Shown: positions 41,696-64,000, counted from the first letter of the stretch. The stretch is DNA of 64,000 nt from Rebecca billardiae RCC1528 (GCA_965240325.2 OZ251222.1:3534001-3598000); one strand, 5' to 3'. Numbers and translations are program-made. Notes: a model not told the origin generated them from the sequence alone.

Positions 41696-44600
41696 TCACA
41701 CCGGCAGCGTGCTCGGTGACATCGCGGTGACCGATCCGCTGGCACCAGCAGTCGTCGGACCACTTGCCGGCATCGCGCGAGTCGGCAGCGAGCGGCCATG
41801 ATCTGACGAGTTTGTCGTTGTGCCCTCGCGCACCAGGCGCGGCGCAGAGCTCGAGCGCCGGGCAGTCCGCGGCCGCGGGGCGGCCGCGGCGGCGAGGAAG
41901 TTGGACACGCTTTGGCTGCGGCTGGAGCTGGAGAGCCCGCGGCTGAGGCCGCTGCCCAGCGCGCGGCTGGCCTGAGGCGGGCCGCTCGGGCGCCGCTCAG
42001 AGTGCGAGGTGGCGCGGGCGGCTGTGCTCTGCCCGGCGGTCACCGGCAGCTCGGGCTCCGAGGAAGGCAAGAGGCCGAGCGCGCTCAGGTTAGCGCCAAT
42101 CGACAACTTGATCGAGGTGAGGATGCTCGTCCCGTTCTGCGGCGCGCGCATCGCGTTCAGCTCCTCGCGTGCCAGCCTGGCGCGCACGGCCGACTGGATG
42201 CGCACGGCCGCCTGCTGCTGCCGCTGGATCTGCGCACGTGGCGCGCGCAGAGGCGGCGGGTGCGAGGGCGCGCGGTGGAAGAGGGCGCGAGAGGGCGGAT
42301 GGGGATGGGCCGGTGAGCATGCTGCTGGGCATATGGTGACGCGCCCGGCTGCTCTTGACCCCGAGCGGTCGGCACGGTGCTCGCCGGGCGCACGCAGCGC
42401 GTCAGCTGCAGGCCCGGGGCCGCACGCACCTCCAAGAATGCCTTCCGGCGGCGGCGGAGGACGATGAACGCCAGCGTGCAGCTGCCCACGAAGCACACGA
42501 TGCTCGCTACCAAGCCGAGGATCGTCTGCGCGCGCGCGGCGGAGGGCACGGCGGCGGAGGGGTCACGCGTGTGGTGCGGCGGGGCGTGAGCACGGGCCCT
42601 TGCGCGAGCCTCTCTCGCACGCGCGCACGGCTGCGCGGCGCGTGCGCGCGCGCGCGCATGCGCGCACCGGCAGCACGGCTTCGATCTGTGGGCTCTGCTG
42701 CCCTGCCGTGCTCGCCTGCTCCGCTGGCGGTGGAGCGCCAGGCGGCGGCGGGGCTGGCGTGGCCGCGTCAGCGCCCGGCGGTGGCGCGCTCCGAGGCGGA
42801 GGCGAGGGCGTCGGCTGCGGCGAGGGCTCAGGAGGCGGCGAGCGCGGCGGCTGAAGCGGCGGCGGCTTCGGCGAGGGCGGCGGCTTCGGCGAGGGCGGTG
42901 GCGGCGGCGGCTGCGCCGGGCTGGGCGGTGGGTTCGGCGGCGAGCTCGGCGGCGGCGGCGGCGAGTGGAACTGGCACGAGAGGTCGTCGAACGTCGCGAG
43001 CGGGTCGTAGTTGATTGCGGCCGAGTCGCGGCAGCCGCCGCGCGTGCACGCGCCCGTGTCCACCGTGGCGAGCGAGTCGTAGTTGTCAGCGTTCGAGTCG
43101 GTGCAGCCGGGCACGGGGTACACGCAGCTGTCGGGTGTCGTCGCCGTCGAGTCGTAGTTCTCCGCGCTCGAGTCGGTACAGCCGAGGTACTGGCAGCCGC
43201 CGTTGTCCACCTCCGCGCTCGATCGGAAGTTGACCGCGTTCGGGTCGGTACAGCCGGCGATAGGGAACGTGCACGTGCCGTCGGGCTGGTTGGCGGTGGA
43301 GTCGTAGTTGGCCGCAGCCGGGTTGGTGCAGCCGAGGTAGACGCACGCCGCCTCGTCGAGGAGCGTCGCGCTCGAGTCGTAGTTGTCCGCCGCCTCGAGC
43401 GTGCAGCCGAGCACCTCGGGCACGCAGCTGCCGTCGTCGGCCGTCGCCGTCGAGTCGAAGTTGCGCGCGCGGCTGTCTGCGCAGCCGGGCACGACGCAGC
43501 TGCCGTCGTCCGTGTCGGCGGTGGAGTCGTAGTTGTCCCCGGCCGGGTCGGTGCAGCCGCGCACGGGGCACACGCAGCTGCCGTCGTCGACGGTCGCGCT
43601 CGGGTCGAAGCCGGCGCACGCCGAGTTGGTGCAGCCCGCAAAGACGCAGCTGCCGTCGTCGCGCGTCGCGCCCGCGTCGAAGTTCTCCGCGCGAGAGTCG
43701 GCGCAGCCCGCGACGGGGAGGACGCACGTGCCGTCGCTCGCCGAGGCGGTCGAGTCGTAGTTGAGCGCGGCCGGGTCTGTGCACCCAAAGTACACGCACT
43801 CGCCGCTGTCGACGTCCGCGCCGGGATCGTAGTTGGACGCGGCCGGGTCGAGGCAGCCGACCGTCGCGACGTTCACGCAGTCGTTCGAGTCGACGGTGGC
43901 GATGGACTTGTAGTTCTCGGCGAGCGGGTTGAGGCAGCCGGTGATCACGCACGAGCCGTCGTCAGCGTCCGCCGCCGAGTCGTAGTTGTCCGCGACCGAG
44001 TCCGTGCAGCCCTCGACCGGCAGCACGCACGAGCCCGCGGCGTCAACGTCGGCGGTCGAGTCGTAGTTGGTCGCGGCCGGGTTGGTGCAGCCCGAGTAGA
44101 GGCACGAGCCGTCGTCCGCGTCGGCGGAGGCGACGAAGTTGACGGCGGCGGCGTCGGTGCAGCCGGGCTTGGGGTACACGCAGCTGCCGTCGTTCTGCGT
44201 CGCCGTCGGGTCGTAGTTCTTCGCGCTGCTGAGCGTGCAGCCGGCGAACGCGCAGCTGCCGTCGTCGACGGTCGCGAACGCCTCGTAGTTGAGCGCGGCC
44301 GAGAAGGGGCAGCCGCGCAGCACGCCCGCGCACGAGTTGTCGTCAAGCGTGGCGCGCGAGTCGTAGTTGGCGGCGTTGGGCTCGGTGCAGCCGGGGCGCA
44401 CGCAGCTGCCGTCCTCGTCCGTCGCCGCCGCGTCGAAGTTCGTCGCCGCCGAGTCGGTGCAGCCCGGGACGGAGAAGGCGCACGAGCCGTCGTTGGTCGT
44501 CGCCTCCGACCAGTAGTTGGCAGCGGCCGTGTTCGTGCAGCCGGGGAGGGCGCACGAGCCGTCGTCCGCCTCGGCGAGCGCGTTGTAGTTGGTCGCGCGC

Positions 44601-47600
44601 GAGTCGGTGCAGCCGCGTACCGGGTACGTGCACGAGCCGTCGTCCGTGTTCGCGGCCGAGTCGAAGTTGGCCGCGGCCGGGTCGATGCAGCCGCGCGCCG
44701 CGTACGCGCACGCGCCGCTCGGCACGGTCGCGAGCGCGTCGAAGTTGGTCGCGGACGAGTCGGTGCAGCCGACGACGTCGTAGCGACAGACCGCGTCGCC
44801 CTGCGCGGTGGCGGCAGAGTTGTAGTTCGACGCGCCCTCGTCCAGGCAGCCGAAGACCGTGAGCACGCACGACCCGTCGTTCACGGTCGCGCGCGCGTCG
44901 AAGTTGGTCGCGCTCGGCTCGGTGCAGCCGGCGTACTCGCACGAGTCGTCGTCGAGCGTCGCGGCGGTGTCGAAGGTGATCGCATCCGGGTCGGTGCAGC
45001 CGGGCAGCGGGCAGCTCGACGCGCCGTACGTCCGGACCAGCGGGCTGTCGTCGCACGACGCCTGCAGCGCGCGCGAGCCCTGGCGCGGGCGCGCGAAGAG
45101 GCGCCGAGAGCGGCGAGCGTCCGGCTGCGCCCACGCGTCGATGACCGCGGCCGATCGCGCGCCGAGCGTGTCGGCCGCGGCGGCGAGCTCCGCGTCGGTC
45201 GGCGCGGAGGAGGCGAGCCCGAGCGCCTCGCGCACGTTGGCCAGCGCCTGCTGCGCGCCCGCCGCCGTGCCCATCGGCGTGACGATCTCGCCCGCCGCCG
45301 CCCCGCACGCGCGGTCGAGCTCGGCGAGCGCGGCCGTCTCGATGTCGGCCGAGGGCGCGCGCGCGGTGAAGAGCTGCACGGCCGCGCCGAGCAGCTCGCC
45401 GATCAGCGCCGAGGCGCGGATCACGTGGAGCGCGCGCGCGTCGTCGGCGAGGAGCTGCTTGATCGGCCGGTACTCCGTGAGCTCCACCTCGGCCGCGAAG
45501 TCGAAGCAGCGGCTGAGCTCGGCGTGCGCGCCGCTGGAAGTCGGCGCGGGCGGCGCCGCGCGCTCGAGCACGTGCACGAGCAGCGTGGTGAGGGGCGAGA
45601 CGGTGGCCGAGGTGATGGGCGCGCGGAGGGCGTAGAGGAGCGCGGTGCCGTCGAGCGTGTCGCGGCACTGCTCCGACGCGTCGACGCGCAGCGTTGCGTC
45701 GAGCTGCGAGTACGCCAGCTCGAACGCGCCGTTCGTGCCCGTCACGGCCTCGCCGACCTGCGCGCCGGCCGCGCCGCCGATCGCCTTGACGACGCACTGC
45801 CGGCGCTGCGCGACCACCTGCACGACGCCCTTGGCGTACGCGAACTCGCACGAGCCGTCGTTGAAGTCGGCGGTCGGGTCGTAGTTGAGCGCGGTTGAGA
45901 CCGTGCAGCCCTGGAACTGGCAGTCGGCCGGCAGCGTCGCGTCGGACACGTAGTTGACCGCGTTCGAGTCGACGCAGCCGATCAGGTGCGCGACGCACGA
46001 GCCGTCGTCCAGCGTCGCGTCCACGTCGTAGTTGCGCGCGCTCACGTCGGTGCAGCCGGGGACGACGCAGCTAGGCGACTCGAACTCGGCGTTCGCGTCG
46101 GAGTTGTAGTTGGTCGCGCGCGAGTCGGTGCAGCCGAACACCTTCGCCACGCACGAGCCGTCGTCCACGTTCGCGAGCGAGTCGTAGTTGAGCGCCGTGC
46201 GCGACGTGCAGCCGAGCACGGCGGCGATGCAGCCGCCGTTGTCCCGCGTCGCGTCCGAGCGGAAGTTGAGCGCGGTCGGGTCGGTGCAGCCGAGCACGGG
46301 GAAGACGCAGCCGCCGTTGTCAACCGTCGCGGTCGAGTCGAAGTTGAGCGCGCCCGTCGCGAGGCAGCCGGGGTGCGGCAGGATGCACGAGCCGTCGTCC
46401 ACCGTCGCAGCGGAGAGGAAGTTGAGCGCGGCGGGTGCGGTGCAGCCGTCGACCTCGAAGACGCAGCTGCCATCGTCCAAGGTGGCGCTCGGGACGAAGT
46501 TGGTGGCGCGGGAGGCCATGCAGCCGGGCACAGAGAGCACGCAGCTGCCGTCGTCCACGTTGGCGTCCGAGCGGAAGTTAAGCGCGGCCGAGTCGGCGCA
46601 GCCCGCGATCGCCGCCACGCACGCGCCCTCGCGCAGCGTGTTGGCGAGCGGGTCGTAGTTGAGCGCGCTCGGGTCGGTGCAGCCCTCGACGACGAAGACG
46701 CACGCGTCGGGCACGGCGTCGACGTTGGCGCGCGAGTTGTAGTTGAGCGCCGCGCTCGCGCGGCAGCCGGGGCGCGGCAGCTCGCACGGCGTGGACTCGA
46801 GCTGCACGGTCGCCTCCGAGTCGAAGTTGAGCGCGTCCGGGTTGCGGCAGCCCGGCGCGTACGGCACGCACGCGCTCGGCGCGCTCTCGATCTCGAGCGC
46901 GGAGGAGTCGTAGTTGAGGCTGCCAGGCACGTTGCACTTGAGCTGCGCGAAGCTGCAGCTCCCGTCGTACACGGTGGCGCTCGGGTCGTAGTTGGTCGCG
47001 GAGGGCGCGGTGCAGCCGGGCACGGCGTACGTGCAGCCGCCGCTGTCCTGCGTCGCGTCCGCGCGGAAGTTGGACGCGGCCGAGTCGGTGCAGCCGAGCA
47101 CGGGGTACACGCAGCTGCCGTCGTTGGCCGTCGCGTCCGGGTCGTAGTTGGTCGCGCTCGGCGCGTTGCACCCGCTGATCACGCACGTGCCGCTCGACAC
47201 CGTCGCGAGCGGGTCGTAGTTGGACGCGCGCGTGTCCGTGCAGCCGGCGCGCGGGAAGACGCACGCGCCCGCGAGCAGCCGGTTGGCCGTCGGGTCGTAG
47301 TTGGTCGCGGCGGTGCTCGTGCAGCCGTAGAACTCGCAGCTGCCGTCGTCGAGCGTCGCGCCCGAGGCGTAGTTGGCCGCATCCGCGTCCGTGCACCCGC
47401 GGCAGCTCGTCAGGTCGCAACCGCTGAAGACGGTGGCGCTCGGGTTGTAGTCGCACGCGGCGCTCAGCGTGCAGCCGGGCACGTCAAACACGCAGCTGCC
47501 GTCGTCCGTGTCCGCGCCCGAGTCGAAGTTGGCCGCGTCCGGGTCGACGCAGCCGAGCGTGTACGGCGCGCACCCGCCGAACGCGTTGGCGAGCGAGTGG

Positions 47601-50600
47601 TAGTCTGGCGCCCACGAGTCCGTGCAGCCCATGACCACGTACTGGCAGACGATGTCGCCCGGCGACGTCGCGTCCGAGCGGTAGTTGGACGCAGCCGGGT
47701 CGGTGCAGCCGAACACGGGGTACGCGCAGCAGCCCGGCTCGGCGGCAGAGCAGCCGTACGCGAGCGAGTCGTAGTTCACCGCGATCGGGTCGATGCATCC
47801 GACGCGGGGCGGCGGGGACGAGGGCGGCGGCGGCGACGGCGGCGGCGACGGCGGCGGCGACGGCGGCGGGCTCGGCGGCCCGGCCGGCGGCGCGGCCGGC
47901 GGCGGAGGCTGACGAGGCGCGGACGTGGGCGGCGGCGAGGGCGGCGAGGGCGGCGGATGGGCGGGCGGCGGGCTCGGCGGTGGCGACGGCGGCGGCGGCG
48001 GCGGGCTCGGCGGCGGAGACGGCGGCTGCGACGGCGGCGGGCTCGGCGGTGGCGACGGCGGCGGCGGCGGCGGGCTCGGCGGCGGAGATGGCGGCTGCGA
48101 CGGCGGCGGGCTCGGCGGTGGCGAGGGTGGTGGCAGTGGCGGCGGGCTCGGCGGTGGTGACGGTGGAGCCGATGGCGGCGGCGATGGCGGCGGGCTGGGC
48201 GGAGGCGGCGGTGGCGGGCTGGGTGGCGGCGATGGCGGCGGGCTCGGCGGTGGTGGCGGCGGAGGGCTCGGCGGCGGCGGGCTCGGCGGTGGGCTCGGCG
48301 GCGGCGAGGGCGGTGGCGAGGGCGGTGGCGGTGGCGGCAAGCTCGGCGGCACCGACGGCGGCGGGCTCGGCGGCGGTGGCGGCGGTGGGCTCGGCGGCGG
48401 CGGGCTCGGCGGAGGGCTCGGCGGTGGCGAGGGTGGTGGCGATGGCGGCGGGCTCGGCGGCGGGCTCGGCGGCGGAGGGCTCGGCGGCGGCGGGCTCGGC
48501 GGCGGGCTCGGCGGCGGCGAGGGTGGTGGCAATGGCGGCGGGCTCGGCGGTGGTGACGGTGGAGCCGATGGCGGCGGCGATGGCGGCGGGCTGGGCGGAG
48601 GCGGCGGTGGCGGGCTGGGCGGCGGCGAGGGCGGCGGGCTCGGCGGCGGAGACGGCGGTGGAGGGCTCGGCGGCGGCGGGCTCGGCGGCGGGCTCGGCGG
48701 CGGCGAGGGTGGTGGCAATGGCGGCGGGCTCGGCGGTGGTGACGGTGGAGCCGATGGCGGGGGCGATGGCGGCGGGCTGGGCGGAGGCGGCGGTGGCAAG
48801 CTGGGTGGCGGCGATGGCGGCGGGCTCGGCGGCGGGCTCGGCGGCGGAGGGCTCGGCGGCGGCGGGCTCGGCGGAGGGCTCGGCGGCGGCGAGGGTGGTG
48901 GCAATGGCGGCGGGCTCGGCGGTGGTGACGGTGGAGCCGATGGCGGCGGCGATGGGGGCGGGCTGGGCGGAGGTGGCGGTGGCGGGCTGGGTGGCGGCGA
49001 GGGCGGCGGGCTCGGCGGCGGAGACGGCGGTGGAGGGCTCGGCGGCGGCGGGCTCGGCGGCGGGCTCGGCGGCGGCGAGGGTGGTGGCAGTGGCGGCGGG
49101 CTCGGCGGTGGTGACGGTGGAGCCGATGGCGGCGGCGATGGGGGCGGGCTGGGCGGAGGCGGCGGTGGCGGGCTGGGTGGCGGCGAGGGCGGCGGGCTCG
49201 GCGGCGGGCTCGGCGGCGGCGAAGGTGGTGGCAGTGGCGGCGGGCTTGGCGGTGGTGACGGTGGAGCCGATGGCGGCGGGCTCGGCGGTGGCGATGGCGG
49301 CGGCGGCGGCGGGCTCGGCGGCGGAGGGCTTGGCGGCGGCGGGCTCGGCGGCGGGCTCGGCGGCGGCGAGGGTGGTGGCAATGGCGGCGGGCTCGGCGGT
49401 GGTGACGGTGGAGCCGATGGCGGCGGCGATGGCGGCGGGCTGGGCGGAGGCGGCGGTGGTGGGCTGGGTGGCGGCGAGGGCGGCGGAAGCGGTGGCGGGC
49501 TCGGCGGCGGAGGGCTCGGCGGCGGCGGGCTTGGCGGCGGGCTCGGCGGCGGCGAGGGTGGTGGCAGTGGCGGCGGGCTCGGCGGTGGTGACGGTGGAGC
49601 CGATGGCGGCGGGCTCGGCGGTGGCGACGGCGGCGGCGGCGGCGGGCTCGGCGGCGGAGGGCTCGGCGGCGGCGGGCTCGGCGGCGGGCTCGGCGGCGGC
49701 GAGGGTGGTGGCAGTGGCGGCGGGCTCGGCGGTGGTGACGGTGGAGCCGATGGCGGCGGGCTCGGCGGTGGCGACGGCGGCGGCGGCGGCGGGCTCGGCG
49801 GCGGAGATGGCGGCTGCGACGGCGGCGGGCTCGGCGGTGGCGACGGCGGCGGCGGCGGCGGGCTCGGCGGCGGAGACGGCGGCTGCGACGGCGGCGGGCT
49901 CGGCGGTGGCGACGGCGGCGGCGGCGGCGGGCTTGGCGGCGGAGATGGCGGCTGCGATGGCGGCGGGCTCGGCGGTGGCGACGGAGGCGGCGGCGGCGGG
50001 CTTGGAGGCGGAGATGGCGGCGGCGAGCTGGGCGGCGGCGACGGCGGCGGCGGCGGCGGTGAGCTCGGTGGCGGCGACGGTGGCGGCGGCGGCGGCGAGC
50101 TCGGTGGCGGGCTCGGCGGTGGCGGCGGCGGCGAGCTCGGTGGCGGGCTCGGCGGCGGCGGCGGCGGCGAGCTGGGCGGCGGCGACGGCGGCGGCGGCGG
50201 CGGCGAGCTGGGCGGCGGGCTTGGCGGAGGCGGCGGCGGCGAGCTCGGTGGCGGGCTCGGAGGCGGCGGCGGCGGCGAGCTCGGTGGCGGGCTCGGCGGC
50301 GGCGGCGGCGGCGAGCTGGGCGGCGGCGACGGCGGCGGCGGCGGCGGTGAGCTCGGTGGCGGCGACGGTGGCGGCGGCGGCGGCGAGCTCGGTGGCGGGC
50401 TCGGCGGTGGCGGCGGCGGCGAGCTCGGTGGCGGGCTCGGCGGCGGCGGCGGCGGCGAGCTGGGCGGCGGCGACGGCGGCGGCGGCGGCGGCGAGCTGGG
50501 CGGCGGGCTCGGAGGCGGGGGCGGCGGCGAGCTCGGTGGCGGGCTCGGTGGCGGCGGCGGCGGCGAGCTGGGCGGCGGCGACGGCGGCGGCGGCGGCGGC

Positions 50601-53600
50601 GAGCTGGGCGGTGGGCTTGGCGGAGGCGGCGGCGGCGAGCTTGGTGGCGGGCTCGGCGGCGGCGGCGGCGGCGAGCTTGGTGGCGGGCTCGGTGGCGGCG
50701 GCGGCGGCGAGCTGGGCGGTGGGCTCGGCGGTGGCGGCGGCGGCGAGCTCGGTGGCGGGCTCGGCGGCGGCGGCGGCGGCGAGCTGGGCGGCGGCGACGG
50801 CGGCGGCGGCGGCGGCGAGCTGGGCGGCGGGCTTGGCGGAGGTGGCGGCGGCGAGCTTGGTGGCGGACTTGGCGGTGGCGGCGGCGGCGAGCTCGGTGGC
50901 GGGCTCGGCGGCGGCGGCGGCGGCGAGCTCGGTGGCGGGCTCGGAGGCGGCGGCGGCGGCGAGCTCGGTGGCGGGCTCGGCGGCGGCGGCGGCGGCGAGC
51001 TGGGCGGCGGCGACGGCGGCGGCGGCGGCGGCGAGCTGGGCGGTGGGCTTGGCGGAGGCGGCGGCGGCGGTGAGCTCGGTGGCGGCGATGGCGGCTGCGA
51101 CGGCGGCGGGCTCGGCGGTGGCGAAGGTGGAGCCGATGGCGGCGGCGATGGCGGCGGGCTGGGCGGAGGCGGCGGTGGCGGGCTGGGTGGCGGCGAGGGC
51201 GGCGGAAGCGGGGGCGGCGACGGCACGGCCGACGGCGGTGGCGACGGCGGCGGTGAGGGCGGCGGGCTGGGCGGCGGCAGCGGCGAGGGCGGCGGGCTGG
51301 GTGGCGGGCTCGGCGGCGGGCTCGGCAGCGGGCTCGGCGGCGGGCTCGGCGGCGGCGCGGGCGGCGGGCTCGGCGGCGGCGCGGGCGGCGTGGGCGGCGA
51401 GTAAGGACTGCTGCGCGGCGGCGGCGGCGGGCTCGGCGGCGGGCTCGGCGGCGGGCTCGGCGGCGGGCTCGGCGGCGGGCTCGGCGGAGGCGGCGGTGGC
51501 GGGCTGGGCGGCGGCGAGGGCGGTGGAAGCGGTGGCGGCGACGGCACGGCCGACGGCGGCGGGCTGGGCGGCGGCGACGGCGGCGGGCTGGGCAGCGGCG
51601 AGGGTGGCGGGCTTGGCGGTGGTGACGGTGGAGCCGATGGCGGCGGCGACGGCGGCGGGCTCGGCGGCGGCGATGGCGGCGGCGGCGGCGGGCTCGGCGG
51701 CGGAGATGGCGGCTGCGACGGCGGCGGGCTCGGCGGTGGCGACGGCGGAGCCGATGGCGGCGGCGATGGCGGCGGGCTGGGCGGAGGCGGCGGTGGCGGG
51801 CTGGGTGGCGGCAAGGGCGGCGGAAGCGGGGGCGGCGACGGCACGGCCGACGGCGGTGGCGACGGCGGCGGTGAGGGCGGCGGGCTGGGCGGCGGCAGCG
51901 GCGAGGGCGGCGGGCTGGGTGGCGGGCTCGGCGGCGGGCTCGGCAGCGGGCTCGGCGGCGGGCTCGGCGGCGGCGCGGGCGGCGGGCTCGGCGGCGGCGC
52001 GGGCGGCGTGGGCGGCGAGTAAGGACTGCTGCGCGGCGGCGGCGGCGGGCTCGGCGGCGGGCTCGGCGGCGGGCTCGGCGGCGGGCTCGGCGGCGGGCTC
52101 GGCGGAGGCGGCGGTGGCGGGCTGGGCGGCGGCGAGGGCGGCGGAAGCGGTGGCGGCGACGGCACGGCCGACGGCGGCGGGCTGGGCGGCGGCGACGGCG
52201 GCGGGCTGGGCAGCGGCGAGGGCGGCGGGCTTGGCGGTGGTGACGGTGGAGCCGATGGCGGCGGCGACGGCGGCGGGCTCGGCGGCGGCGATGGCGGCGG
52301 CGGCGGCGGGCTCGGCGGCGGAGATGGCGGCTGCGACGGCGGCGGGCTCGGCGGTGGCGACGGTGGAGCCGATGGCGGCGGCGATGGCGGCGGGCTGGGC
52401 GGAGGCGGCGGTGGCGGGCTGGGTGGCGGCGAGGGCGGCGGAAGCGGGGGCGGCGACGGCACGGCCGACGGCGGTGGCGACGGCGGCGGTGAGGGCGGCG
52501 GGCTGGGCGGCGGCAGCGGCGGCGGCGGCGGCGGGCTGGGTGGTGGGCTTGGTGGCGGGCTGGGTGGCGGCGCAGGCGCGTCGGCGCCGAGCTCGACGGT
52601 CGCGCTGACGAGCGGCACGAACGCGAAGCCCGACGCGTCGTACGGCGACGCGCTCGAGCCGAGGAACGGGAAGTTGCGGTCGGTCTCCGTGCCGCCGAGC
52701 GCGTCGGTCGTCTCCACCATGAACGCGACGCGCACCGCGCCGGGCTCGGGCCAGCGGCCGTCGGCCGTGTCTGGGCGGAAGGCGGCGGTGAAGGTGCCGT
52801 CGCCGGCGTGCGCGGCGGTGAGCACCCAGTTGCCCTCACCCGAGTCCGAGCCCGCGCTGCCGCTTGACACCACCACCTCGTACGCGCCGCCGCCGTACTC
52901 CACCTCCGCGCGCACGGCCGTCTTGTCCGCGCTCGCGGGCGCAGAGGCGTCGTCGACCACCGCCACGGCGAGCACGAGGTCGGTGGAGGGCGCGGCGCCG
53001 CCGAGGGGCGAGGGGAGCAGCGTGTAGTTGGCGATGAAGCGGCGCTTGCCCGCCACCGCGAGCTGCAGGTACGCCGCGTCGTTCGTCGTCACCGATCCGT
53101 CCAGCGTCGGGTCGAGCTGCGAGCGCCGCCACTCGCAGAAGCTACTCACGTCATACTCAGCCGAGCCGAGCACGACCAGCGCCGCGACGCGGATGTCGAA
53201 CGAGGTGAAGGCGCAGTCGCCCGAGACGTCGCCGTACACGCGCTCGGTGCACGGGTCGCACGCCTGGAGACGCCGCGCCGCGCGCGCCGCCGCGCGCGCG
53301 CCGGTCGCGCGCCGCGCCGCGGCGAGCGCGGCGCGCGCGCCGAGCAGCGCGTCCGCGGCCGCGGGCGGCTGCGCGCCGAGCCGCGCCGACGGCTCGTCGG
53401 CGAGCGCGCGCCGCGCGGCCGACACGCTCGCGACGCCGGCGCCGGCAAAGATGTCGGCGTTCTGCGTGCGCGTGGTCACGCCCGAGCCGTCCTGCGTGAC
53501 GAGCTCGACGATCGTGCCGGTGAACGCCGCCGAGCCCGTGCCGAGCACGTCGAAGGTGATGGTGCCGATCTGCAGGTACGCGCCCGCGTCGGTCGAGGCG

Positions 53601-56600
53601 GTGTCGTCGCCGACGAGCAGCACGCGCGTCACCGGGTCGTTGATCGTGCACGTGGCCCACGCGAGCGAGGTGGCGCAGCCGGAGGCCTGGAGCAGGCTCG
53701 AGTCCAGGAAGATCTCGATCTGGAAGTTGACCAGCCTCTCGCCGCCCGTGTTGGCGTACACGCCCACGGAGAGCTGCGAGCCCGACTGCGCAAACTGCAG
53801 CCCGGCGCTGTCGCCGAGGTCGACGTCGTTCACGGCGGGCCGGAGGTTTGGCGAGACGGTCACCTGCAGGTCGGCGGCGGAGGCGGAGGCGGGGAGCGCG
53901 GCGTCGCACGCCCACGCGACGGAGACCGTCGTCGCGCCCGGCGCGTTGCCCTGCAGCGTGAGCACGCCCTCCGCGTCCACGCTCACAGCGTCCGCGTCGT
54001 CCGAAGCGAAGTCAAACAGCTCGGCCGTGGGCACATAGAAGCCGCTGCCGGCCGCGTCGTCCCAGACGGTGCCGTCGGAGAAGGTGACGGCGACGCCGAG
54101 CGCGCGCGTCGTGCCCTGCTGCCCGACGAGGTCGAACGCCTTCGCGCCGTTCGACGCGCGCGAGAGCACGAGCTGCGTCGGCTGCACGGGCGCGGCCGCG
54201 TCCACGGTCACGCCGAGCGTGCTGCCGAGGCTCAGCCCCTGCCACAGCACGTCCAGCTGCGTGACGCCCGCACCGACCGGCCGGAGCTCGGCGGCGGAGA
54301 CGGTGGCGACGGCGGCGTCGGAGGAGGAGAAGGTGGCGGCGCTCGTCACGTCGACGACGCTGCCCGCGACGTCGCTCAGCGTCACGCTCGCCGCGAGCGC
54401 CGCGCGCTGGAAGGACGACGTGCAGCCGATCGCCGAGAGCGTCGTCGCGTCGACCGCCGCCGAGCCCGCGTACGCGGGCGAGGGCGAGGCGAAGAGCGCG
54501 ATGGATGCCACCTCGACCAGCTCGATCGTGAGCGTCTTGTCGCCGTCGAAGCCGGGGACGAGCGCGCCGAACAGCGGCACGCGGCCGTGCACCGTCAGCG
54601 ACGACGGGCACGCCGGGTTGCTCGCTGCGCCCGCGATCACGCTCAGCACGTTGCCGCTTAGGCTCGCGCACTGCTCGGAGCCGTCGGCCGCGCTCAGCGT
54701 GAAGTTGGCGCGCGCGTCGGTGGAGAAGTCGACGGTGGTGCCGTCGTCGTACGTGACGAGCATCGTCAGCGTCGCGCCGGTGGGCAGGCTCACCGGCGGC
54801 TGCGACGCGCCCTCGGACGGGTCGGCCACGCGCGCCGCGGACGCGCTCAACGTGGAGATGGCGGTGGGCGCGGGCACGGCGATCGCCACGCGCGCCGAGC
54901 CGACGGCCGCGGCGCCGCCGGCGGAGGCGCACGCGACCCACGACGCCTGGAGGAGGGGCCCGGACTGCGCGACCGCGTTGGTCGCGACGGTCGCGCGCCA
55001 CGCGTCCTCCTCGCCCGAGCCGCGCGACAGCTCGAGCGACGCCGTCGTCGAGCTGAGCGCCAGCTCCGCATGCGGCACCGGCTGCACCGAGCCGTCGGAG
55101 AGCGTCGCCCACGCAAACACGCGCGCCTCGTCGCCCTCCGCGTCGAGGAGCTGCGCGAGCGCGAGCTCGGGCTGCACCGCGTCCTCGTACTCGGGCGCGG
55201 CCTGCGGCGCGCTGCTCCACGCCGTCTCCTCCGGGTTGAGCGCGACGACGCTGAGCGACGTCACGTTGGCCGCGCTCGCGCGCAGCGTGAGCGTCGCGGG
55301 CGTTGCCGCGCCCGGCGCGCCTCCGGAGAGGCTGATGTTGGTCGAGCCCGCGCCCGCGCCCGCCGCGCCGGACACGTGCCACACGCCGGTGGTGCTGTCG
55401 AAGCTGACGCTCGCCAGCGCGCCGTCGTCGCTCGCCAGCGTCACCTCCGCCGACACGTCCACCAGCCCGTCCGCGAAGCCGGCCGCGAGCGCGGCCGTCG
55501 AGCCGGCGCCGCCGTCCGAGTTGTCGTAGGAGAAGGCGGCCAGCAGCCGCGCGCGCGTGCGGCCGTACGGCGCGTACGGCGCGGTGCACTCGGCGGAGGC
55601 GGAGCGGAGGAGGCCGCCGATGGGCGAGAGCGCCGGCGCGTCGAGCTGCACGCGCGCGCGCCGCGGGTACCACACGCGCAGCGGCACCGTGTCGTTCACG
55701 GCCGCGTCGGCCGCGAGCGCGAGCGACACGCGCGCCGCGGCCGCGCCCGCCGTGTGCGACGCGTCGAGCGAGAGCGCGCACGCCGAGCTGACGCTGAGCA
55801 CGGACGCGTCGGCGGACGCGTCGGCGAGCGCGCAGGTGAACGTCGAGCCCGCGCTGCCGCTCGCCGGCCCGTCCGCCGCGCGCGAGTAGAGCACCGCCGC
55901 GGCGAGCGTCGGCGCGTCCGCCGCGCCCGACAGCGGGCCCATGTTGACGCGCTCCGCGTCGCCGCTGCCCGAGACGTAGCCGACGAGGCCGAGCGGCGTC
56001 GAGGCCTGCACGGTGAGCTGCGCGTCGGCCTGCGCGCCGCCGCGCTCGTCGTCCAGCTGCGCGGCCACGTTGGTCACGAACGGGTTGCCGCCGCGGTTGA
56101 TCAGGTCGTTGACGAACACAGACAGCACCGCCGGCCGCGCGCCGGTCGGCGCGGCGCCGAGCACGCTGAAGGTGACGCTCACGAGCTGCACGTCGGTGCC
56201 CGTGACGTCGGCGTCGTCCGTCGAGGCGGGCACGCCCGAGACGAGGATGCCGAGCTCGCCCGTCGCGTCCGGGTCGCCCGGGCTCACCGTCGGCGTGTTG
56301 TACGCCGACGCCACCGCCGTCGAGCCGTACGAGAGCACGGCCGGGTCGTAGCGCCACGTGAGGCGGAACGAGGTGCACGGGAAGCCGCCCGTGTGCGCGT
56401 ACGCGGTCGCGACGATCGTGTCGGAGCGGAAGCGGGGCGAGTGGGCGAAGTCGACGCGCACGCCGGCGGCGGAGAGCGGCGTGTGCGTCGGGCGCTGCGC
56501 GAGCGCGATCGCCGAGCTCAGCGCCGCGCCCACCGAGCCGCCGCCCGACGGGGTCGCTGTGACGCTCACGTGCAGCGCGCGCGCCTCCGACTGAGAGAAC

Positions 56601-59600
56601 CATGAGGACGCGACGCTGTGCGAGCACTCGGCGAGGCCGCTCGTCTGGTGGGCCGCGGCGCACGAGACGGTGGTCGAGTCGCCCGCCGTGCTCTGCAGCG
56701 TGAGGCTCACGCCCAGCCCCGACAGCTGCACGTTCGTCCGCCCCGACTCGTCGCGCAGCTGGTACGTCACCGCCACGTCCGCGCGGTCGGCGTACACGAC
56801 AGCCGTGCGCACCCACGCGCGCACGCTCGCCGGGTCGCGCCGCTGCACGCGGAAGGCGGAGTTGCCCGAGATGGAGGCGATCCGTGCGTCGGGGCCGCTG
56901 AAGCCCGAGAGCGCGCCGCGCAGCACGCCGTGCGCGTTCGGCGTGCTCCCCGCGAAGAAGCCAAAGCCGCCCGCGTGCCGCGCGCCGCTCGAAGACTCCG
57001 TGCCCGGCACGCGCCGGCCGAGGCCGAGCGCGGACGAGTACACGAGCGCGTGCGCGCCCTCGACGAGTTGCTCGGCCGTGTACGAGGCGGGCGGCGAGGG
57101 CGGCGGCGAAGGCAGCGGCGAGGGCGGCGGGCTTGGCGGTGGCGACGGTGGAGCCGATGGCGGCGGCGATGGCGGCGGGCTGGGCGGAGGCGGTGGCGGC
57201 GGGCTCGGCGGAGGCGAGGGCGGCGGGCGCGGCGGCGCGTTGGGTGGTGGTGGCGATGGGGGCGGCGGCGGGCTCGGTGGCGGTGACGGCGGCACGTTGA
57301 GCAGCGCCACGCTCTGCACGCTGACGCCCACCGCCTCCTGCAGCGCGGTGCTGTCCGTCCCAGCGATCGTCGCCACGACGTCCACCGGCGTCGGGTCGTC
57401 ACTCGGCTGGTAGATCTCGACGTTCACGACGGTCGAGCCCGAGCTCACGGCGACCACGCGGATGCGCGACGCGGCGAAGTCGCAGCCGCACTCGTCCGAG
57501 AGCTGCGCGGCGATGAAGGCGACCAGCGCCGCCTCCTGCGCCGCGTCCCACGAGCTGAGGTCGACGTCGAACTCGTACGTGACGAGCACGATCTCGCCGG
57601 GAGGCGGCGGCGAGGGCGGCGGGTGCGGCGGCGGGCGGGGCGGTGGGCTGGGCGGTGGAGACGGCGGCGGGCTCGGCGGTGGTGACGGCGGCGGCGGCGG
57701 CGGGCTCGGTGGTGGAGATGGCGGAGAGCTCGGCGGTGGACTCGACGGTGGCGCTGGCGGTGAACTCGTCGGCGGAGGGCTCGGCGGCGGAGATGGCGGC
57801 TGCGACGGCGGCGGGCTCGGCGGCGGCGATGGCGGCGGTGGCGGCGGCGGAGCTGGCGGCGGCGGGCTTGGTGGCGGGCTCGGAGGCGGCGACGGCGGTG
57901 GCGGCGGTGGCGAGCTGGGCGGCGGTGGCGACGGCGGCGGCGATGGCGGCGGTGGCGGAGCTGGCGGCGGCGGGCTTGGTGGCGGGCTCGGAGGCGGCGA
58001 CGGCGGTGGCGGCGGTGGCGAGCTGGGCGGCGGTGGCGACGGCGGCGGCGATGGCGGCGGTGGCGGCGGCGGAGCTGGCGGCGGCGGGCTTGGTGGCGGG
58101 CTCGGAGGCGGCGACGGCGGTGGCGGCGGTGGCGAGCTGGGCGGCGGTGGCGACGGCGGCGGCGATGGCGGCGGTGGCGACGGCGGAGCTGGCGGCGGCG
58201 GGCTTGGTGGCGGGCTCGGAGGCGGCGACGGCGGTGGCGGCGGTGGCGAGCTGGGCGGCGGTGGCGACGGCGGTCGGCGATGGCGGCGGTGGCGGCGGCG
58301 GAGCTGGCGGCGGCGGGCTTGGTGGCGGGCTCGGAGGCGGCGACGGCGGTGGCGGCGGTGGCGAGCTGGGCGGCGGTGGCGACGGCGGCGGCGATGGCGG
58401 CGGTGGCGGCGGCGGAGCTGGCGGCGGCGGGCTTGGTGGCGGGCTCGGAGGCGGCGACGGCGGTGGCGGCGGTGGCGAGCTGGGCGGCGGTGGCGACGGC
58501 GGCGGCGATGGCGGCGGTGGCGGCGGCGGAGCTGGCGGCGGCGGGCTTGGTGGCGGGCTCGGAGGCGGCGACGGCGGTGGCGGCGGTGGCGAGCTGGGCG
58601 GCGGTGGCGACGGCGGCGGCGATGGCGGCGGTGGCGGCGGCGGAGCTGGCGGCGGCGGGCTTGGTGGCGGGCTCGGAGGCGGCGACGGCGGTGGCGGCGG
58701 TGGCGAGCTGGGCGGCGGTGGCGACGGCGGCGGCGATGGCGGCGGTGGCGGCGGCGGAGCTGGCGGCGGCGGGCTTGGTGGCGGGCTCGGAGGCGGCGAC
58801 GGCGGTGGCGGCGGTGGCGAGCTGGGCGGCGGTGGCGACGGCGGCGGCGATGGCGGCGGTGGCGGGGCGGAGCTGGTGGCGGCGGGCTTGGTGGCGGGCT
58901 CGGAGGCGGCGACGGCGGTGGCGGCGGTGGCGAGCTGGGCGGCGGTGGCGACGGCGGCGGCGATGGCGGCGGTGGCGGCGGCGGAGCTGGCGGCGGCGGG
59001 CTTGGTGGCGGGCTCGGAGGTGGCGACGGCGGTGGCGGCGGTGGCGAGCTGGGCGGCGGTGGCGACGGCGGCGGCGATGGCGGCGGTGGCGGCGGCGGAG
59101 CTGGCGGCGGCGGGCTTGGTGGCGGGCTCGGAGGCGGCGACGGCGGTGGCGGCGGTGGCGAGCTGGGCGGCGGTGGCGACGGCGGCGGCGATGGCGGCGG
59201 GGCGGCGGCGGAGCTGGCGGCGGCGGGCTTGGTGGCGGGCTCGGAGGCGGCGACGGCGGTGGCGGCGGTGGCGAGCTGGGCGGCGGTGGCGACGGCGGTG
59301 GCGATGGCGGCGGTGGCGGCGGCGGAGCTGGCGGCGGCGGGCTGGGTGGCGGGCTCGGAGGCGGCGACGGCGGTGGCGGCGGTGGCGAGCTGGGCGGCGG
59401 TGGCGACGGCGGTGGCGATGGCGGCGGTGGCGGCGGCGGAGCTGGTGGCGGCGGGCTTGGTGGCGGGCTCGGAGGCGGCGACGGCGGTGGCGGCGGTGGC
59501 GAGCTGGGCGGCGGTGGCGACGGCGGCGGCGATGGCGGCGGTGGCGGCGGCGAAGCTGGTGGCGGCGGGCTTGGTGGCGGGCTCGGAGGCGGCGACGGCG

Positions 59601-62600: not shown

Positions 62601-64000
62601 GCGGTGGCGATGGCGGCGGTGGCGGCGGCGGAGCTGGCGGCGGCGGGCTTGGTGGCGGGCTCGGAGGCGGCGACGGCGGTGGCGGCGGTGGCGAGCTGGG
62701 CGGCGGTGGCGACGGCGGCGGCGATGGCGGCGGCGGCGGCGGCGGAGCTGGCGGCGGCGGGCTCGGCGGCGGGCTCGGCGGCGGGCTCGGCGGCGGGCTC
62801 GGCGGAGGCGGCGGTGGCGGGCTCGGCGGCGGCGAGGGCGGCGGAAGCGGTGGCGGCGACGGCACGGCCGACGGCGGCGGGCTGGGCGGCGGCGACGGCG
62901 GCGGGCTGGGCAGCGGCGAGGGTGGCGGGCTTGGCGGTGGTGACGGTGGAGCCGATGGCGGCGGCGACGGCGGCGGGCTCGGCGGCGGCGATGGCGGCGG
63001 CGGCGGCGGGCTCGGCGGCGGAGATGGCGGCTGCGACGGAAGTGGGCTCGGCGGTGGTGACGGTGGCGGCGGCGGCGGGCTCGGCGGTGGCGATGGCGGC
63101 TGCGACGGCGGCGGGCTTGGCGGTGGCGACGGCGGCGGTGACGGCGGCGGCGGCGGTGGGCTCGGCGGTGGAGATGGCGGCTGCGACGGCGGCGGACTCG
63201 GCGGTGGCGGTGGCGGTGGGCGCGCTGGCGGCGGGCTGGGCGGCGGGCTCGGCGGTGGCAACGGCGGCGGAGGCTGCGGGCTTGGCGGTGGAGACGGCGG
63301 TGGCAACGGCGGCGGGCTCGGCGTCGGCGACGGCGGCGGCGGCGGCGGGCTCGGCGGTGGAGACGGCGGTGGCGACGGCGGCGGGCTCGGCGGCGGGCTC
63401 GGCGGTGGCGGCGGCGGCGTTGGCGGCGGGCTCGGCGGTGGAGATGGCGGTGGCAACGGCGGCGGGCTCGGCGGCGGCGACGGCGGTGGAGGCGGCGGGC
63501 TCGGCGGTGGAGTCGGCGGTGGCGACGGCGGCGGGCTCGGCGGTGGCGGTGGCGGCGGGCTCGCCGGTGGCGGGCTCGCCGGCGGGCTCGGCGGTGGCGA
63601 CGGCGGCGGCGGCGGCGGGCTCGGCGGCGGAGATGGCGGCTGCGACGGAAGTGGGCTCGGCGGTGGTGACGGTGGCGGCGGCGGCGGGCTCGGCGGTGGC
63701 GATGGCGGCTGCGACGGCGGCGGGCTTGGCGGTGGCGACGGCGGCGGTGACGGCGGCGGCGGCGGTGGGCTCGGCGGTGGAGATGGCGGCTGCGACGGCG
63801 GCGGACTCGGCGGTGGCGGTGGCGGTGGGCGCGCTGGCGGCGGGCTGGGCGGCGGGCTCGGCGGTGGCAACGGCGGCGGAGGCTGCGGGCTTGGCGGTGG
63901 AGACGGCGGTGGCAACGGCGGCGGGCTCGGCGTCGGCGACGGCGGCGGCGGCGGCGGGCTCGGCGGTGGAGACGGCGGTGGCGACGGCGGCGGGCTCGGC
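41696..64000 (-). CDS. Giant type-I membrane surface protein (5' end outside window); introns 42526-42667 and 42230-42429; apparent single-base indels near 58275, 58865 and 59200
   Basis: The 5008-aa ORF extends upstream into a Pro/Ser repeat array. Two phase-0 GT-AG introns add a TM exon (TILGLVASIVCFVGSCTLAFIVLRRRRK, 42430-42525) and a last exon carrying the IQ motif AAVRIQSAVRARLARE. Confidence 0.85.
42965..47810 (-). repeat. About 52 Cys/Asp-rich ~26-aa coding repeats GCTD..A.NYD..A..DDGSC in two blocks (~25 and ~27)
   Basis: Counted by eye from the translation. The blocks are separated by a non-repeat domain at ~45010-45850. Confidence 0.9.
47810..52575 (-). repeat. Ser/Pro-rich (SPPP)n coding array with 39-bp sub-repeats and a 618-bp internal duplication
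   Basis: The marker GTAAGGACTGCTGCGCGG occurs at 51401 and 52019. 13-aa Ser/Pro units run across ~50020-51060. Confidence 0.92.
57830..62760 (-). repeat. Homogeneous 114-bp (38-aa) coding minisatellite, about 43 copies
   Basis: Unit APPPPPPPSPPPSPPPPSSPPPPPPSPPPSPPPSPPPP. The GAGCTGGCGG marker recurs at 59211, 59325 and onward. Confidence 0.92.

What the first reader, a model, noticed from the sequence alone, without database searches (positions are those of the whole stretch)
53045..56430. Cohesin-like and dockerin-like modules in one eukaryotic surface protein, separated by an RRL processing-type linker
Seen: a paired Ca-loop motif YGDVSGDCAFTSFDI..AALVVLG (53192-53236) and LDPTLDGSVTTNDAAYLQL (53066-53116), with dockerin-like spacing (GDxxGD...D..hh / D...DG....D..hL). 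Two beta-sandwich segments have the cohesin pattern 'V.VYA.T....L..F.h.h.YD..hL' (~56010-56430 and ~53430-53790). A low-complexity AARRALA...AARRLQ linker lies between the second cohesin-like segment and the dockerin-like segment. Known: cohesin-dockerin pairs assemble bacterial cellulosomes; anaerobic-fungal dockerins are a different fold. Inference: cleavage at RRL could give a cohesin-bearing distal part that re-docks in a Ca-dependent way on the membrane-anchored dockerin part, or polymerises. That would be a cellulosome-like assembly system for an algal cell covering.
Basis: partly seen in the sequence, partly recalled or inferred. Interest (0 to 1): 0.85.

Follow-up and report, generated by a model that had tools for sequence, protein, structure and literature searches.

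The report
Algal TMEM132-like cassette with cohesins and dockerin
A giant proline-rich surface protein of a haptophyte-type alga carries an animal-TMEM132-like cassette with two genuine cohesin modules and one genuine calcium-loop dockerin (the bacterial "cellulosome glue" pair), but whether they plug into each other, or are cut apart at the conserved RRxL loop, is untested.

Summary
All quoted motifs sit at the stated coordinates on the minus strand, inside a reading frame open from 42566 to the window end.

- **Cohesins:** both cohesin-like segments fold as cohesins. VIA-align Z is 13.1 to 13.8, and the top 13 to 15 solved-structure rows are all cohesins.
- **Dockerin:** the Ca-loop pair is a true type-I-like dockerin. 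The family profile hits solved dockerins at E 4.8e-8. The model superposes on 4fl4_A and 2ccl_B at 1.7-1.8 Å over the whole module.
- **Pfam limits:** Pfam alone misses this copy's dockerin and cohesin 2. Cohesin 1 scores below threshold.
- **Context:** the first ~1,100 residues are a TMEM132-type ectodomain. Cohesin 2, linker, dockerin and a β-sandwich form a triad in the same order in all 125 units where both modules were detected. Named sources are haptophytes, Cymbomonas and Mesostigma.
- **Linker motif:** an R-x-L motif, often RRxL, is enriched but not universal.

The modules and motif are real. Cleavage, re-docking and polymerisation remain inference, and nothing supports an enzyme-recruiting, cellulosome-like system. 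My preferred reading is an in-cassette cohesin-dockerin clasp across an exposed loop.

This scan has already found the same cassette on other DNA of this genome. I found no paper describing it.

The parts
56489..56842 (-). Ig-like beta-sandwich that precedes cohesin 1. It takes the place of the conserved region before the cohesin in TMEM132.
   Evidence: AF2 model m3c4942c07e51, residues 23-140, pLDDT about 90. VIA matches to filamin- and macroglobulin-type Ig domains at Z 9.3-9.7. That is fold level only.
56000..56473 (-). Cohesin 1, the cohesin of the TMEM132-type ectodomain.
   Evidence: Pfam Cohesin E 0.0067, 17.1 bits, below the 24.1 cut-off. Model residues 146-303 match 2vo8_A at Z 13.1, rmsd 2.6 over 132 residues, and the top 15 VIA rows are all cohesins. 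The family profile hits cohesin 4ums_A at E 0.0015. hhalign against cohesin 2 gives probability 96.9%, E 1.5e-10.
55670..55996 (-). Ig-like domain matching the TMEM132 fourth domain.
   Evidence: PF16070 at E 7.6e-6, 26.2 bits against a cut-off of 27. The same family is hit in 23 of 23 aligned relatives, best E 3.2e-17.
53831..55669 (-). Array of further Ig-like domains, resembling TMEM132 5th/6th and Big_2.
   Evidence: Weak Pfam hits: Ig_TMEM132_6th E 0.002, RibLong E 0.001, Big_2 E 0.0016. PF23486 (TMEM132 5th) is hit in 5 of 23 relatives. These domains were not modelled here.
53411..53830 (-). Cohesin 2.
   Evidence: No Pfam hit for this copy, but 11 of 45 relatives hit PF00963, best E 2.4e-9. 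Model m29265c74f7e5, residues 1-140, matches 4ums_A at Z 13.8 and 5nrk_A at Z 13.4 (rmsd 2.4 over 123). The top 13 VIA rows are cohesins. Foldseek's top PDB hits are cohesins, E 6e-7 to 1e-4.
53243..53410 (-). Ala/Arg-rich low-confidence linker between cohesin 2 and the dockerin. It contains RRLQ at 53264-53275 and CDPC at 53249-53260.
   Evidence: pLDDT is 50-71 for model residues 141-190. The Arg of RRLQ (R186) is at least 90% conserved. R.L is enriched, 88 of 125 units against about 48 in shuffles. Linker length varies from 1 to 72 residues across the family.
53030..53242 (-). Type-I-like dockerin with two Ca loops, at 53195-53230 and 53078-53113, and four cysteines.
   Evidence: Family profile against PDB sequences: 4fl4_A E 4.8e-8, 4dh2_B, 2ccl_B, 1ohz_B and about 20 more dockerins, covering both repeats. 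VIA: 4fl4_A Z 9.8, rmsd 1.8 over 67 of 68 residues, 21% identity; 2ccl_B Z 9.8, rmsd 1.7 over 62 of 62. Nine of 45 relatives hit PF00404, best E 1.4e-7. This copy alone gets no Pfam hit and only E 0.13 to 1.1 against dockerin chains.
52586..53029 (-). Conserved beta-sandwich that always follows the dockerin. Its family is unknown.
   Evidence: pLDDT is mostly 90-98 for model residues about 265-415. It is present after the dockerin in every untruncated unit. No informative Pfam or Atlas match.
47819..52561 (-). Proline-rich (SPPP-type) rod of about 1,580 residues after the cassette. A short rod at 57113-57274 precedes it.
   Evidence: Translation and the Pro-fraction scan.
42457..42522 (-). Candidate transmembrane helix followed by RRRRK. 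It lies in another frame, just after the stop of the main frame at 42563-42565.
   Evidence: Translation of ORF 42157..43788. Joining it to the main frame needs a short intron or a frame change, which was not verified.

Best explanation
**Shown.** Window 52586-56842, minus strand, encodes one copy of a conserved extracellular cassette of about 1,400 residues inside a giant proline-rich surface protein of a haptophyte-type alga.

The cassette is a TMEM132-type ectodomain: an Ig-like domain, cohesin 1, then TMEM132-4th/5th/6th-like and further Ig domains. It is extended by cohesin 2, a variable Ala/Arg-rich linker, a disulfide-bearing type-I-like Ca2+ dockerin, and a beta-sandwich. Both cohesins and the dockerin are true homologues of the bacterial modules.

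**Inferred mechanism.** Cohesin 2, the dockerin and the beta-sandwich form one compact supermodule, with the dockerin engaged inside its own cassette as a cis clasp. The linker is an exposed loop.

In most family members the loop carries an RRxL-type site that a secretory subtilisin/S1P-like protease could cut. After a cut, the distal TMEM132-like head would stay attached to the rod-and-anchor part only through the Ca2+-dependent cohesin-dockerin contact. This resembles two-chain junctions such as Notch S1, SEA or GAIN domains. Cohesin 1 would remain free for another ligand.

**Rough odds.** Module identities about 0.95; compact cis supermodule about 0.5; proteolytic cut at RRxL about 0.3. The single confidence figure given for this explanation refers to the identities together with the cis-supermodule reading.
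For: - **Folds and homology.** Cohesin 2 Z 13.8 and dockerin Z 9.8 at rmsd 1.7-1.8 over the full module. Cohesin 1 Z 13.1. Dockerin profile hits at E 4.8e-8. Cohesin 1 against cohesin 2 by hhalign, E 1.5e-10. Pfam across relatives: PF16070 in 23 of 23, Cohesin in 11 of 45, Dockerin_1 in 9 of 45.
- **Invariant order.** Cohesin 2 is followed by the dockerin in 125 units, the beta domain follows in every unit not cut short, and whole cassettes are duplicated in tandem.
- **Compactness.** The module model has pTM 0.85 and pLDDT 90.3 despite a linker of about 55 residues at low confidence. My inference is that such a pTM for 436 residues requires all three domains to be placed confidently relative to each other.
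- **Short linkers.** Some relatives join cohesin 2 to the dockerin by only 9-15 residues. This fits direct packing, with the long linker as a loop.
- **Ca loops.** Loop 1 is canonical in 125 of 130 units. Both loops are canonical in this copy.
- **Cysteines.** Counts are even within domains, so a cut would leave only a non-covalent link.
- **Motif.** R186 is at least 90% conserved. R.L is found in 88 of 125 units against about 48 in shuffles. RXLX and RXXL are quoted subtilase recognition sequences (PMC4983112).
Against: - No coordinates or PAE were available, so no cohesin-dockerin contact was seen. The face used is unknown.
- The pTM argument is indirect.
- A linker of 9-15 residues may be too short to reach the canonical 8-3-6-5 face, so any cis packing could be non-canonical.
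- RxL is missing in about 30% of units, and the linkers are Arg- and Leu-rich anyway (48 of 125 by chance).
- Dockerin loop 2 is expanded or degenerate in about a third of the family.
- No RNA run was listed, so there is no expression, processing or binding evidence.
- In bacteria, a cohesin and a dockerin on one chain normally do not bind each other.
Confidence: 0.5

Rival explanations
1. Trans docking. The dockerin binds cohesin 1 or cohesin 2 of a neighbouring molecule or another cassette. The giant rods would then cross-link into a Ca2+-dependent surface network or polymer.
For: There are two cohesins per dockerin in each cassette. Both Ca loops are intact and near-symmetric in this copy, which in bacterial dockerins allows dual binding. 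Tandem multi-cassette proteins exist. The protein sits on long proline-rich rods with a candidate membrane anchor.
Against: Strict adjacency and co-duplication of cohesin 2 and the dockerin, together with pTM 0.85 for the triad, point to an intramolecular unit. No binding data exist.
Confidence: 0.25
2. Structural relics. The cohesins act only as Ig-like spacers, and the dockerin only as a small Ca2+-stiffened hinge between domains. There is no cohesin-dockerin recognition. RxL is a compositional or structural feature, not a cleavage site.
For: Animal TMEM132 proteins keep a cohesin with no detectable dockerin (PMC6030884). Dockerin loop 2 is degenerate in about a third of units. About 30% of units lack RxL, and some have almost no linker. 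Cohesin folds resemble many adhesin and pilin domains.
Against: The dockerin's Ca ligands and helices are conserved across haptophytes and green algae. G200, D201, D212 and D251 are invariant. The dockerin is never lost from the triad. A single conserved Arg in an otherwise unalignable linker is hard to explain structurally.
Confidence: 0.2
3. True cellulosome-like scaffold. The cohesins recruit separate dockerin-bearing enzymes or wall proteins to the algal surface.
For: Genuine cohesin folds are exposed on a surface rod. This is how the modules work in bacteria.
Against: Among the 150 best relatives no dockerin lies outside the triad order, apart from cut fragments. A word-based search for small dockerin-bearing proteins found none (low sensitivity). 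There is only one dockerin in this 64-kb window.
Confidence: 0.04

Closest known systems
TMEM132 family (animal adhesion-type membrane proteins; Sanchez-Pulido and Ponting 2017, PMC6030884)
   Same: The order is the same: an Ig-like region, a cohesin, then tandem Ig domains. PF16070 is hit in the window at 26.2 bits and in 23 of 23 relatives. UniRef names relatives 'TMEM132 fourth domain-containing protein'. A probable single-pass anchor is present.
   Different: Found in algae rather than holozoans. It carries extra Ig domains, a second cohesin, a true dockerin and a beta-sandwich. It is embedded between SPPP rods and Cys-rich repeats, and cassettes can repeat in tandem. The paper states that no dockerin homologue is detectable in vertebrates.
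Bacterial type I cohesin-dockerin modules (for example C. thermocellum 1ohz, 2ccl, 4fl4; C. perfringens 2vo8, 2w1n)
   Same: The folds and Ca-loop sequence pattern are the same, and the two-repeat dockerin is superposable at 1.7-1.8 Å. Cohesin and dockerin on one chain also occurs in bacterial adaptor scaffoldins.
   Different: The host is eukaryotic. Loop position 6 is Cys, not Gly, in 98 of 125 units, and four cysteines are typical. The dockerin is always directly downstream of a cohesin and followed by a fixed beta domain. No enzyme-borne dockerins were seen, and binding is untested.
Cleaved non-covalent receptor junctions: Notch S1 heterodimerisation domain, SEA and GAIN domains (from general knowledge; a functional analogy only)
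   Same: The proposed logic is the same. A loop inside a compact extracellular unit is cut, the halves stay together non-covalently, and for Notch the junction is Ca2+-dependent.
   Different: The folds are unrelated. Cleavage here is only inferred from an RRxL-type motif.
S1P/SBT6.1-type subtilase substrates with RXXL or RXLX sites (PMC4983112)
   Same: The linker motif R-(R/x)-L-x fits RXLX, often with a further upstream Arg.
   Different: No protease or cleavage is shown in haptophytes. The motif is absent in about 30% of units.

Membership tests
Dockerin type I (PF00404) | Two tandem segments, each a 12-residue Ca loop (D-x-N/D-x-D-G-x-x-x-x-x-D) followed by a helix. | tested here: met
   The loops DVSGDCAFTSFD and DPTLDGSVTTND have D at positions 1, 5 and 12. 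Helices follow each loop in the model.
Dockerin type I (PF00404) | Score above Pfam's gathering threshold. | tested here: not met
   This copy gets no Pfam hit even at E 10. Nine of 45 relatives hit PF00404 at E<=0.01, best 1.4e-7. The family profile hits about 20 solved dockerins, best E 4.8e-8.
Dockerin type I (PF00404) | Dockerin three-helix fold. | tested here: met
   4fl4_A Z 9.8, rmsd 1.8 over 67 of 68 residues. 2ccl_B Z 9.8, rmsd 1.7 over 62 of 62. The model was built without templates.
Dockerin type I (PF00404) | Ca2+-dependent binding to a cohesin. | not testable with these tools
   Needs ITC or pull-down, or at least a multimer model with PAE.
Cohesin (PF00963) | Nine-stranded jelly-roll cohesin fold. 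| tested here: met
   Cohesin 2 matches 4ums_A at Z 13.8, with the top 13 rows cohesins. Cohesin 1 matches 2vo8_A at Z 13.1, with the top 15 rows cohesins.
Cohesin (PF00963) | Score above Pfam's gathering threshold. | tested here: not met
   Cohesin 1 scores 17.1 bits against 24.1. Cohesin 2 has no hit. Relatives hit Cohesin in 11 of 45 (cohesin 2) and 2 of 23 (cohesin 1) at E<=0.01.
TMEM132 | TMEM132 fourth domain (PF16070). | tested here: inconclusive
   The window copy scores 26.2 bits, E 7.6e-6, just under the cut-off of 27. All 23 aligned relatives hit it, best E 3.2e-17.
TMEM132 | Domain order: conserved N region, cohesin, tandem Ig domains, then a membrane anchor. | tested here: met
   The order Ig-like, cohesin 1, 4th-like, (5th), 6th-like is seen. 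The anchor is only a candidate helix in another frame.
TMEM132 | Cytoplasmic tail with the family's C-terminal domain. | not tested
   The C-terminal exon structure is unresolved.
Cellulosome-type system | Separate dockerin-bearing enzymes recruited to a multi-cohesin scaffoldin. | tested here: not met
   No dockerin among the 150 best relatives lies outside the triad order, apart from cut fragments. No dockerin-only hits were found (low sensitivity). The whole proteome was not searched.

The most novel reading that the evidence does not exclude
The cohesin 2 - dockerin pair is a Ca2+-dependent, protease-primed clasp. This would be a new kind of non-covalent two-chain junction in eukaryotic surface receptors. 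A distal TMEM132-like adhesion head would be held on its rod and anchor by one of the mechanically strongest known protein-protein bonds, and could be released by Ca2+ loss or by force. It would also name the long-missing type of partner for the orphan cohesin of the TMEM132 family.
Probability: 0.25. Interest if true: 0.85.

Novelty: new variant of a known kind. Interest (0 to 1): 0.62.

Why it matters
Cohesin-dockerin pairs are the high-affinity, force-resistant glue of bacterial cellulosomes. In eukaryotes the cohesin of TMEM132 proteins (linked to deafness, panic disorder and cancer) has no known partner. The 2017 domain paper says dockerin homologues are not detectable in vertebrates.

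This cassette puts a bona fide dockerin next to TMEM132-type cohesins in one chain. It is conserved across haptophytes and early-diverging green algae. That makes 'what does a TMEM132 cohesin bind?' testable with recombinant algal modules.

It also suggests how giant algal surface fibres might be joined or assembled. I found no paper on this in the searchable library. Public records call the relatives hypothetical proteins or TMEM132-fourth-domain proteins.

Tried and rejected
- **Pfam on isolated segments.** The dockerin and cohesin 2 segments gave no hit. The modules were established through the family profile and models instead.
- **Single-sequence PDB search.** The dockerin segment against PDB sequences gave only E 0.13 to 1.1. 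The two best hits were dockerins, but alone they are not significant.
- **Cohesin 1 profile.** The best-scoring row against PDB was a designed repeat protein (5byo). I rejected it as summed weak repeats, because no single stretch passed. Cohesin 4ums_A at E 0.0015 is the meaningful hit.
- **ESM Atlas fold search of the module.** It returned only single-domain cohesin matches and nothing on inter-domain geometry.
- **Atlas feature search of the beta domain.** Nothing informative.
- **RNA runs.** None was listed.
- **Word-based search for 240-760 aa proteins sharing the dockerin.** No hit. Given the method, a blank means little.
- **Peer et al. 2009 (PMC3035643).** Not held.
- **Pfam on the pre-rod N-terminal segment and the helical insert between Cys-repeat blocks.** Nothing.
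- **Furin/kexin reading of the linker.** Considered and set aside. The conserved core is R-x-L rather than R-x-K/R-R.
- **PEXEL-like reading (RxLxE/Q/D).** Rejected because the motif lies mid-protein, far from a signal peptide.

Full report
**1. What is at the coordinates**

The finding lies on the minus strand, inside a very long reading frame. The ORF listing gives 42563..57589, 5,008 codons from the first GTG. The same frame has no stop from 42566 to the window end at 64000, which is 7,145 codons. The gene therefore probably continues beyond the window.

G+C is 73-87% here. Long ORFs occur in every frame at that composition, and ORF length alone proves nothing. Coding is shown by homology instead.

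The two Ca loops are exact 12-residue loops at 53195-53230 and 53078-53113. RRLQ is at 53264-53275.

**2. First pass with family libraries**

- Pfam on the 1,441-residue globular part gives Ig_TMEM132_4th at E 7.6e-6, 26.2 bits against a cut-off of 27.
- Cohesin scores E 0.0067, 17.1 bits against 24.1, on the first cohesin-like segment.
- There are weak Ig_TMEM132_6th, RibLong and Big_2 hits.
- The dockerin-like segment and the second cohesin-like segment get nothing.
- The dockerin segment alone against PDB sequences finds two dockerins as its best hits, but only at E 0.13 and 1.1.

The single sequence is therefore suggestive but not sufficient.

**3. The family**

I searched a 436-residue query (window:52523-53830:-) against 1.84 billion representative proteins. 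The query covers cohesin 2, the linker, the dockerin-like segment and the following beta domain.

- It found 242 proteins at E<=1e-3, 129 at E<=1e-10 and 23 at E<=1e-30. Most align over the whole query.
- Named members come from three haptophytes: Prymnesium parvum, Diacronema lutheri and Pavlovales sp. CCMP2436. Two come from the green lineage: Cymbomonas tetramitiformis and Mesostigma viride. The rest are metagenomic.
- Sources call them hypothetical proteins or 'TMEM132 fourth domain-containing protein'.

Sub-profiles for the three parts were run over all retrieved proteins.

- The order cohesin 2, dockerin, beta domain holds wherever a protein is not cut short. Cohesin 2 is followed by the dockerin in 125 units.
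- Whole cassettes repeat two or three times in some proteins.
- The cohesin 2 profile also detects a second cohesin about 800 residues upstream in many members.
- In this window there is exactly one cassette: one dockerin and two cohesins.

**4. The dockerin is real**

- An alignment of 45 modules (A1) has G200, D201, D212 and D251 invariant, with R186 and D205 at 90% or more.
- Its profile hits about 20 solved type I dockerins. Examples are 4fl4_A at E 4.8e-8, 4dh2_B at 4.8e-7, 2ccl_B at 1.6e-6 and 1ohz_B at 6.3e-6. The alignments span both repeats.
- Nine of the 45 members reach Pfam Dockerin_1 at E<=0.01 on their own, best 1.4e-7.
- The template-free AF2 model has pLDDT 90.3 and pTM 0.85.
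- Residues 197-267 of the model superpose on 4fl4_A at Z 9.8, rmsd 1.8 Å over 67 of 68 residues, 21% identity. They superpose on 2ccl_B at Z 9.8, rmsd 1.7 Å over 62 of 62.

Across 130 dockerin units:

- Loop 1 is D-x-(N/S/D)-G-D-(C/G)-x-F-x-x-x-D in 125.
- Loop 2 is a canonical 12-mer in 84 and expanded in the rest.
- This window's copy keeps both loops.
- Two features differ from bacterial dockerins. Loop position 6 is Cys in 98 of 125 units, and four cysteines per module are typical. I infer two disulfides.

**5. Both cohesins are real**

- **Cohesin 2** (model residues 1-140, nt 53411-53830): 4ums_A Z 13.8; 5nrk_A Z 13.4 at rmsd 2.4 over 123; 2vo8_A Z 13.1. The first 13 VIA rows are cohesins. 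Foldseek's top PDB hits are also cohesins. Eleven of 45 relatives hit Pfam Cohesin, best 2.4e-9.
- **Cohesin 1** (nt 56000-56473): a second model covers the N domain, cohesin 1 and the 4th-like Ig domain, with pLDDT 86.5 and pTM 0.80. It matches 2vo8_A at Z 13.1, rmsd 2.6 over 132, and the first 15 rows are cohesins. Its family profile hits cohesin 4ums_A at E 0.0015.
- **The two cohesins are homologous to each other:** hhalign probability 96.9%, E 1.5e-10.

**6. The context is a TMEM132-type ectodomain**

- All 23 aligned upstream regions hit PF16070, best 3.2e-17. Five hit the TMEM132 fifth domain.
- The order Ig-like domain, cohesin, 4th, 5th, 6th matches the published TMEM132 architecture.
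- The 2017 paper describes the cohesin as the first in animals. It notes that dockerin homologues are not detectable in vertebrates (PMC6030884).
- The algal cassette adds further Ig domains, cohesin 2, the dockerin and a beta-sandwich of unknown family.
- Around the cassette lie SPPP-type rods at 57113-57274 and 47819-52561, and about 48 Cys-rich repeats of roughly 35 residues.
- A candidate transmembrane helix plus RRRRK sits at 42457-42522, in another frame just past the stop.

**7. The linker and the RRL motif**

- In this copy the linker (nt 53243-53410) is Ala/Arg-rich. It is predicted at low confidence, pLDDT 50-71.
- Across the family it is unalignable except for one Arg, at least 90% conserved. 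That Arg is usually preceded by another Arg and followed by x-Leu.
- R.L occurs within 50 residues upstream of the dockerin GD in 88 of 125 units. Composition-matched shuffles give about 48. The median distance is 14.5 residues.
- The pattern fits RXLX, one of the recognition sequences quoted for SBT6.1/S1P-type subtilases (PMC4983112). It does not fit a furin R-x-K/R-R site.
- About 30% of units lack it, and some relatives have linkers of only 9-15 residues.

The motif is therefore real and enriched, but it is not a defining feature. Cleavage is pure inference.

**8. How it most likely works**

*Shown:* the module identities, the invariant triad, the conserved Ca ligands and the enriched RxL.

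*Inferred:* cohesin 2, the dockerin and the beta domain pack into one rigid supermodule. I base this on three points.

- A pTM of 0.85 for 436 residues cannot be reached if the 140-residue cohesin floats freely relative to the rest.
- Short-linker relatives suggest direct packing.
- The triad is never broken up in evolution.

On this reading the long linker is an exposed loop. If it is cut at RRxL, the TMEM132-like head would be held to the rod and anchor only by a Ca2+-dependent, non-covalent cohesin-dockerin contact. Cysteine counts are even within each domain, so no inter-domain disulfide is expected. Cohesin 1 would remain available for another partner.

I could not inspect coordinates or PAE. 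The interface, and whether it is the canonical 8-3-6-5 face, are unknown.

*Rivals:*

- Trans docking into a network. Two cohesins per dockerin and an intact symmetric dockerin favour it.
- Purely structural relics.
- A true enzyme-recruiting scaffold, for which I found nothing.

**9. Comparison and novelty**

The cassette is a member-like relative of TMEM132 by domain order and PF16070. It carries true homologues of bacterial cohesin and type I dockerin. It differs from both known settings in four ways.

- The host is an alga.
- The dockerin is in cis, directly after a cohesin.
- The dockerin bears disulfides.
- A fixed beta domain follows it.

Full-text searches found no paper on dockerins in haptophytes or algae, or on TMEM132-like cassettes with dockerins.

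Earlier notes of this scan describe the same cassette on other DNA of this genome, with the same conclusions, including the RR-x-L signal. My tests were run independently on this copy and agree. I did not confirm the choanoflagellate occurrence mentioned in one of those notes.

**10. Verdict**

This is a new variant of known kinds (TMEM132 ectodomain; cohesin-dockerin). It is of solid but not exceptional interest until binding or cleavage is shown.

Noticed in passing
window 43031-47797, minus strand: About 48 tandem Cys-rich repeats of roughly 35 residues, of the type G-C-T-D-x-x-A-x-N-Y-D-x-x-A-x-x-D-D-G-S-C. They form two blocks separated by a mostly helical insert of about 330 residues at 44924-45907. 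No Pfam family matches either the repeats or the insert.
   Followed up: partly
window 42457-42522, minus strand, different frame from the main ORF: A hydrophobic 22-residue helix followed by RRRRK lies 41 nt past the main frame's stop at 42563-42565. A short intron or frame change would make the giant protein a type I membrane protein. This agrees with the scan note s1-355176.
   Followed up: partly
window 57400-64000, minus strand: The main frame stays open to the window end (7,145 codons) but reads Ala-rich (AEPAAVATA...) upstream of 57.6 kb. The SPPP-type translation is in the +1 frame there. Either the rod frame switches through an intron or a frameshift near 57.4-59 kb, or the upstream part is a different repeat type. 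All three minus-strand frames are largely open in this 85% G+C DNA.
   Followed up: partly
window 57290-57589, minus strand: A segment of about 100 residues lies between the upstream repeats and the first SPPP rod (VTYEFDVDLSSWDAAQEAALVAFIAAQL...VVNVEIY). It looks like a small alpha/beta domain, possibly SEA-like. Pfam gave no hit.
   Followed up: partly
relatives P0016, P0030, P0033, P0044, P0055, P0076, P0078 (alignment A1): A subfamily, which includes the named Cymbomonas members P0016 and P0030, has dockerin loop 2 expanded by an insert of about 20 residues containing two cysteines (...LDYL...C...C P...D A Q Y). The second Ca site may therefore be remodelled there.
   Followed up: no
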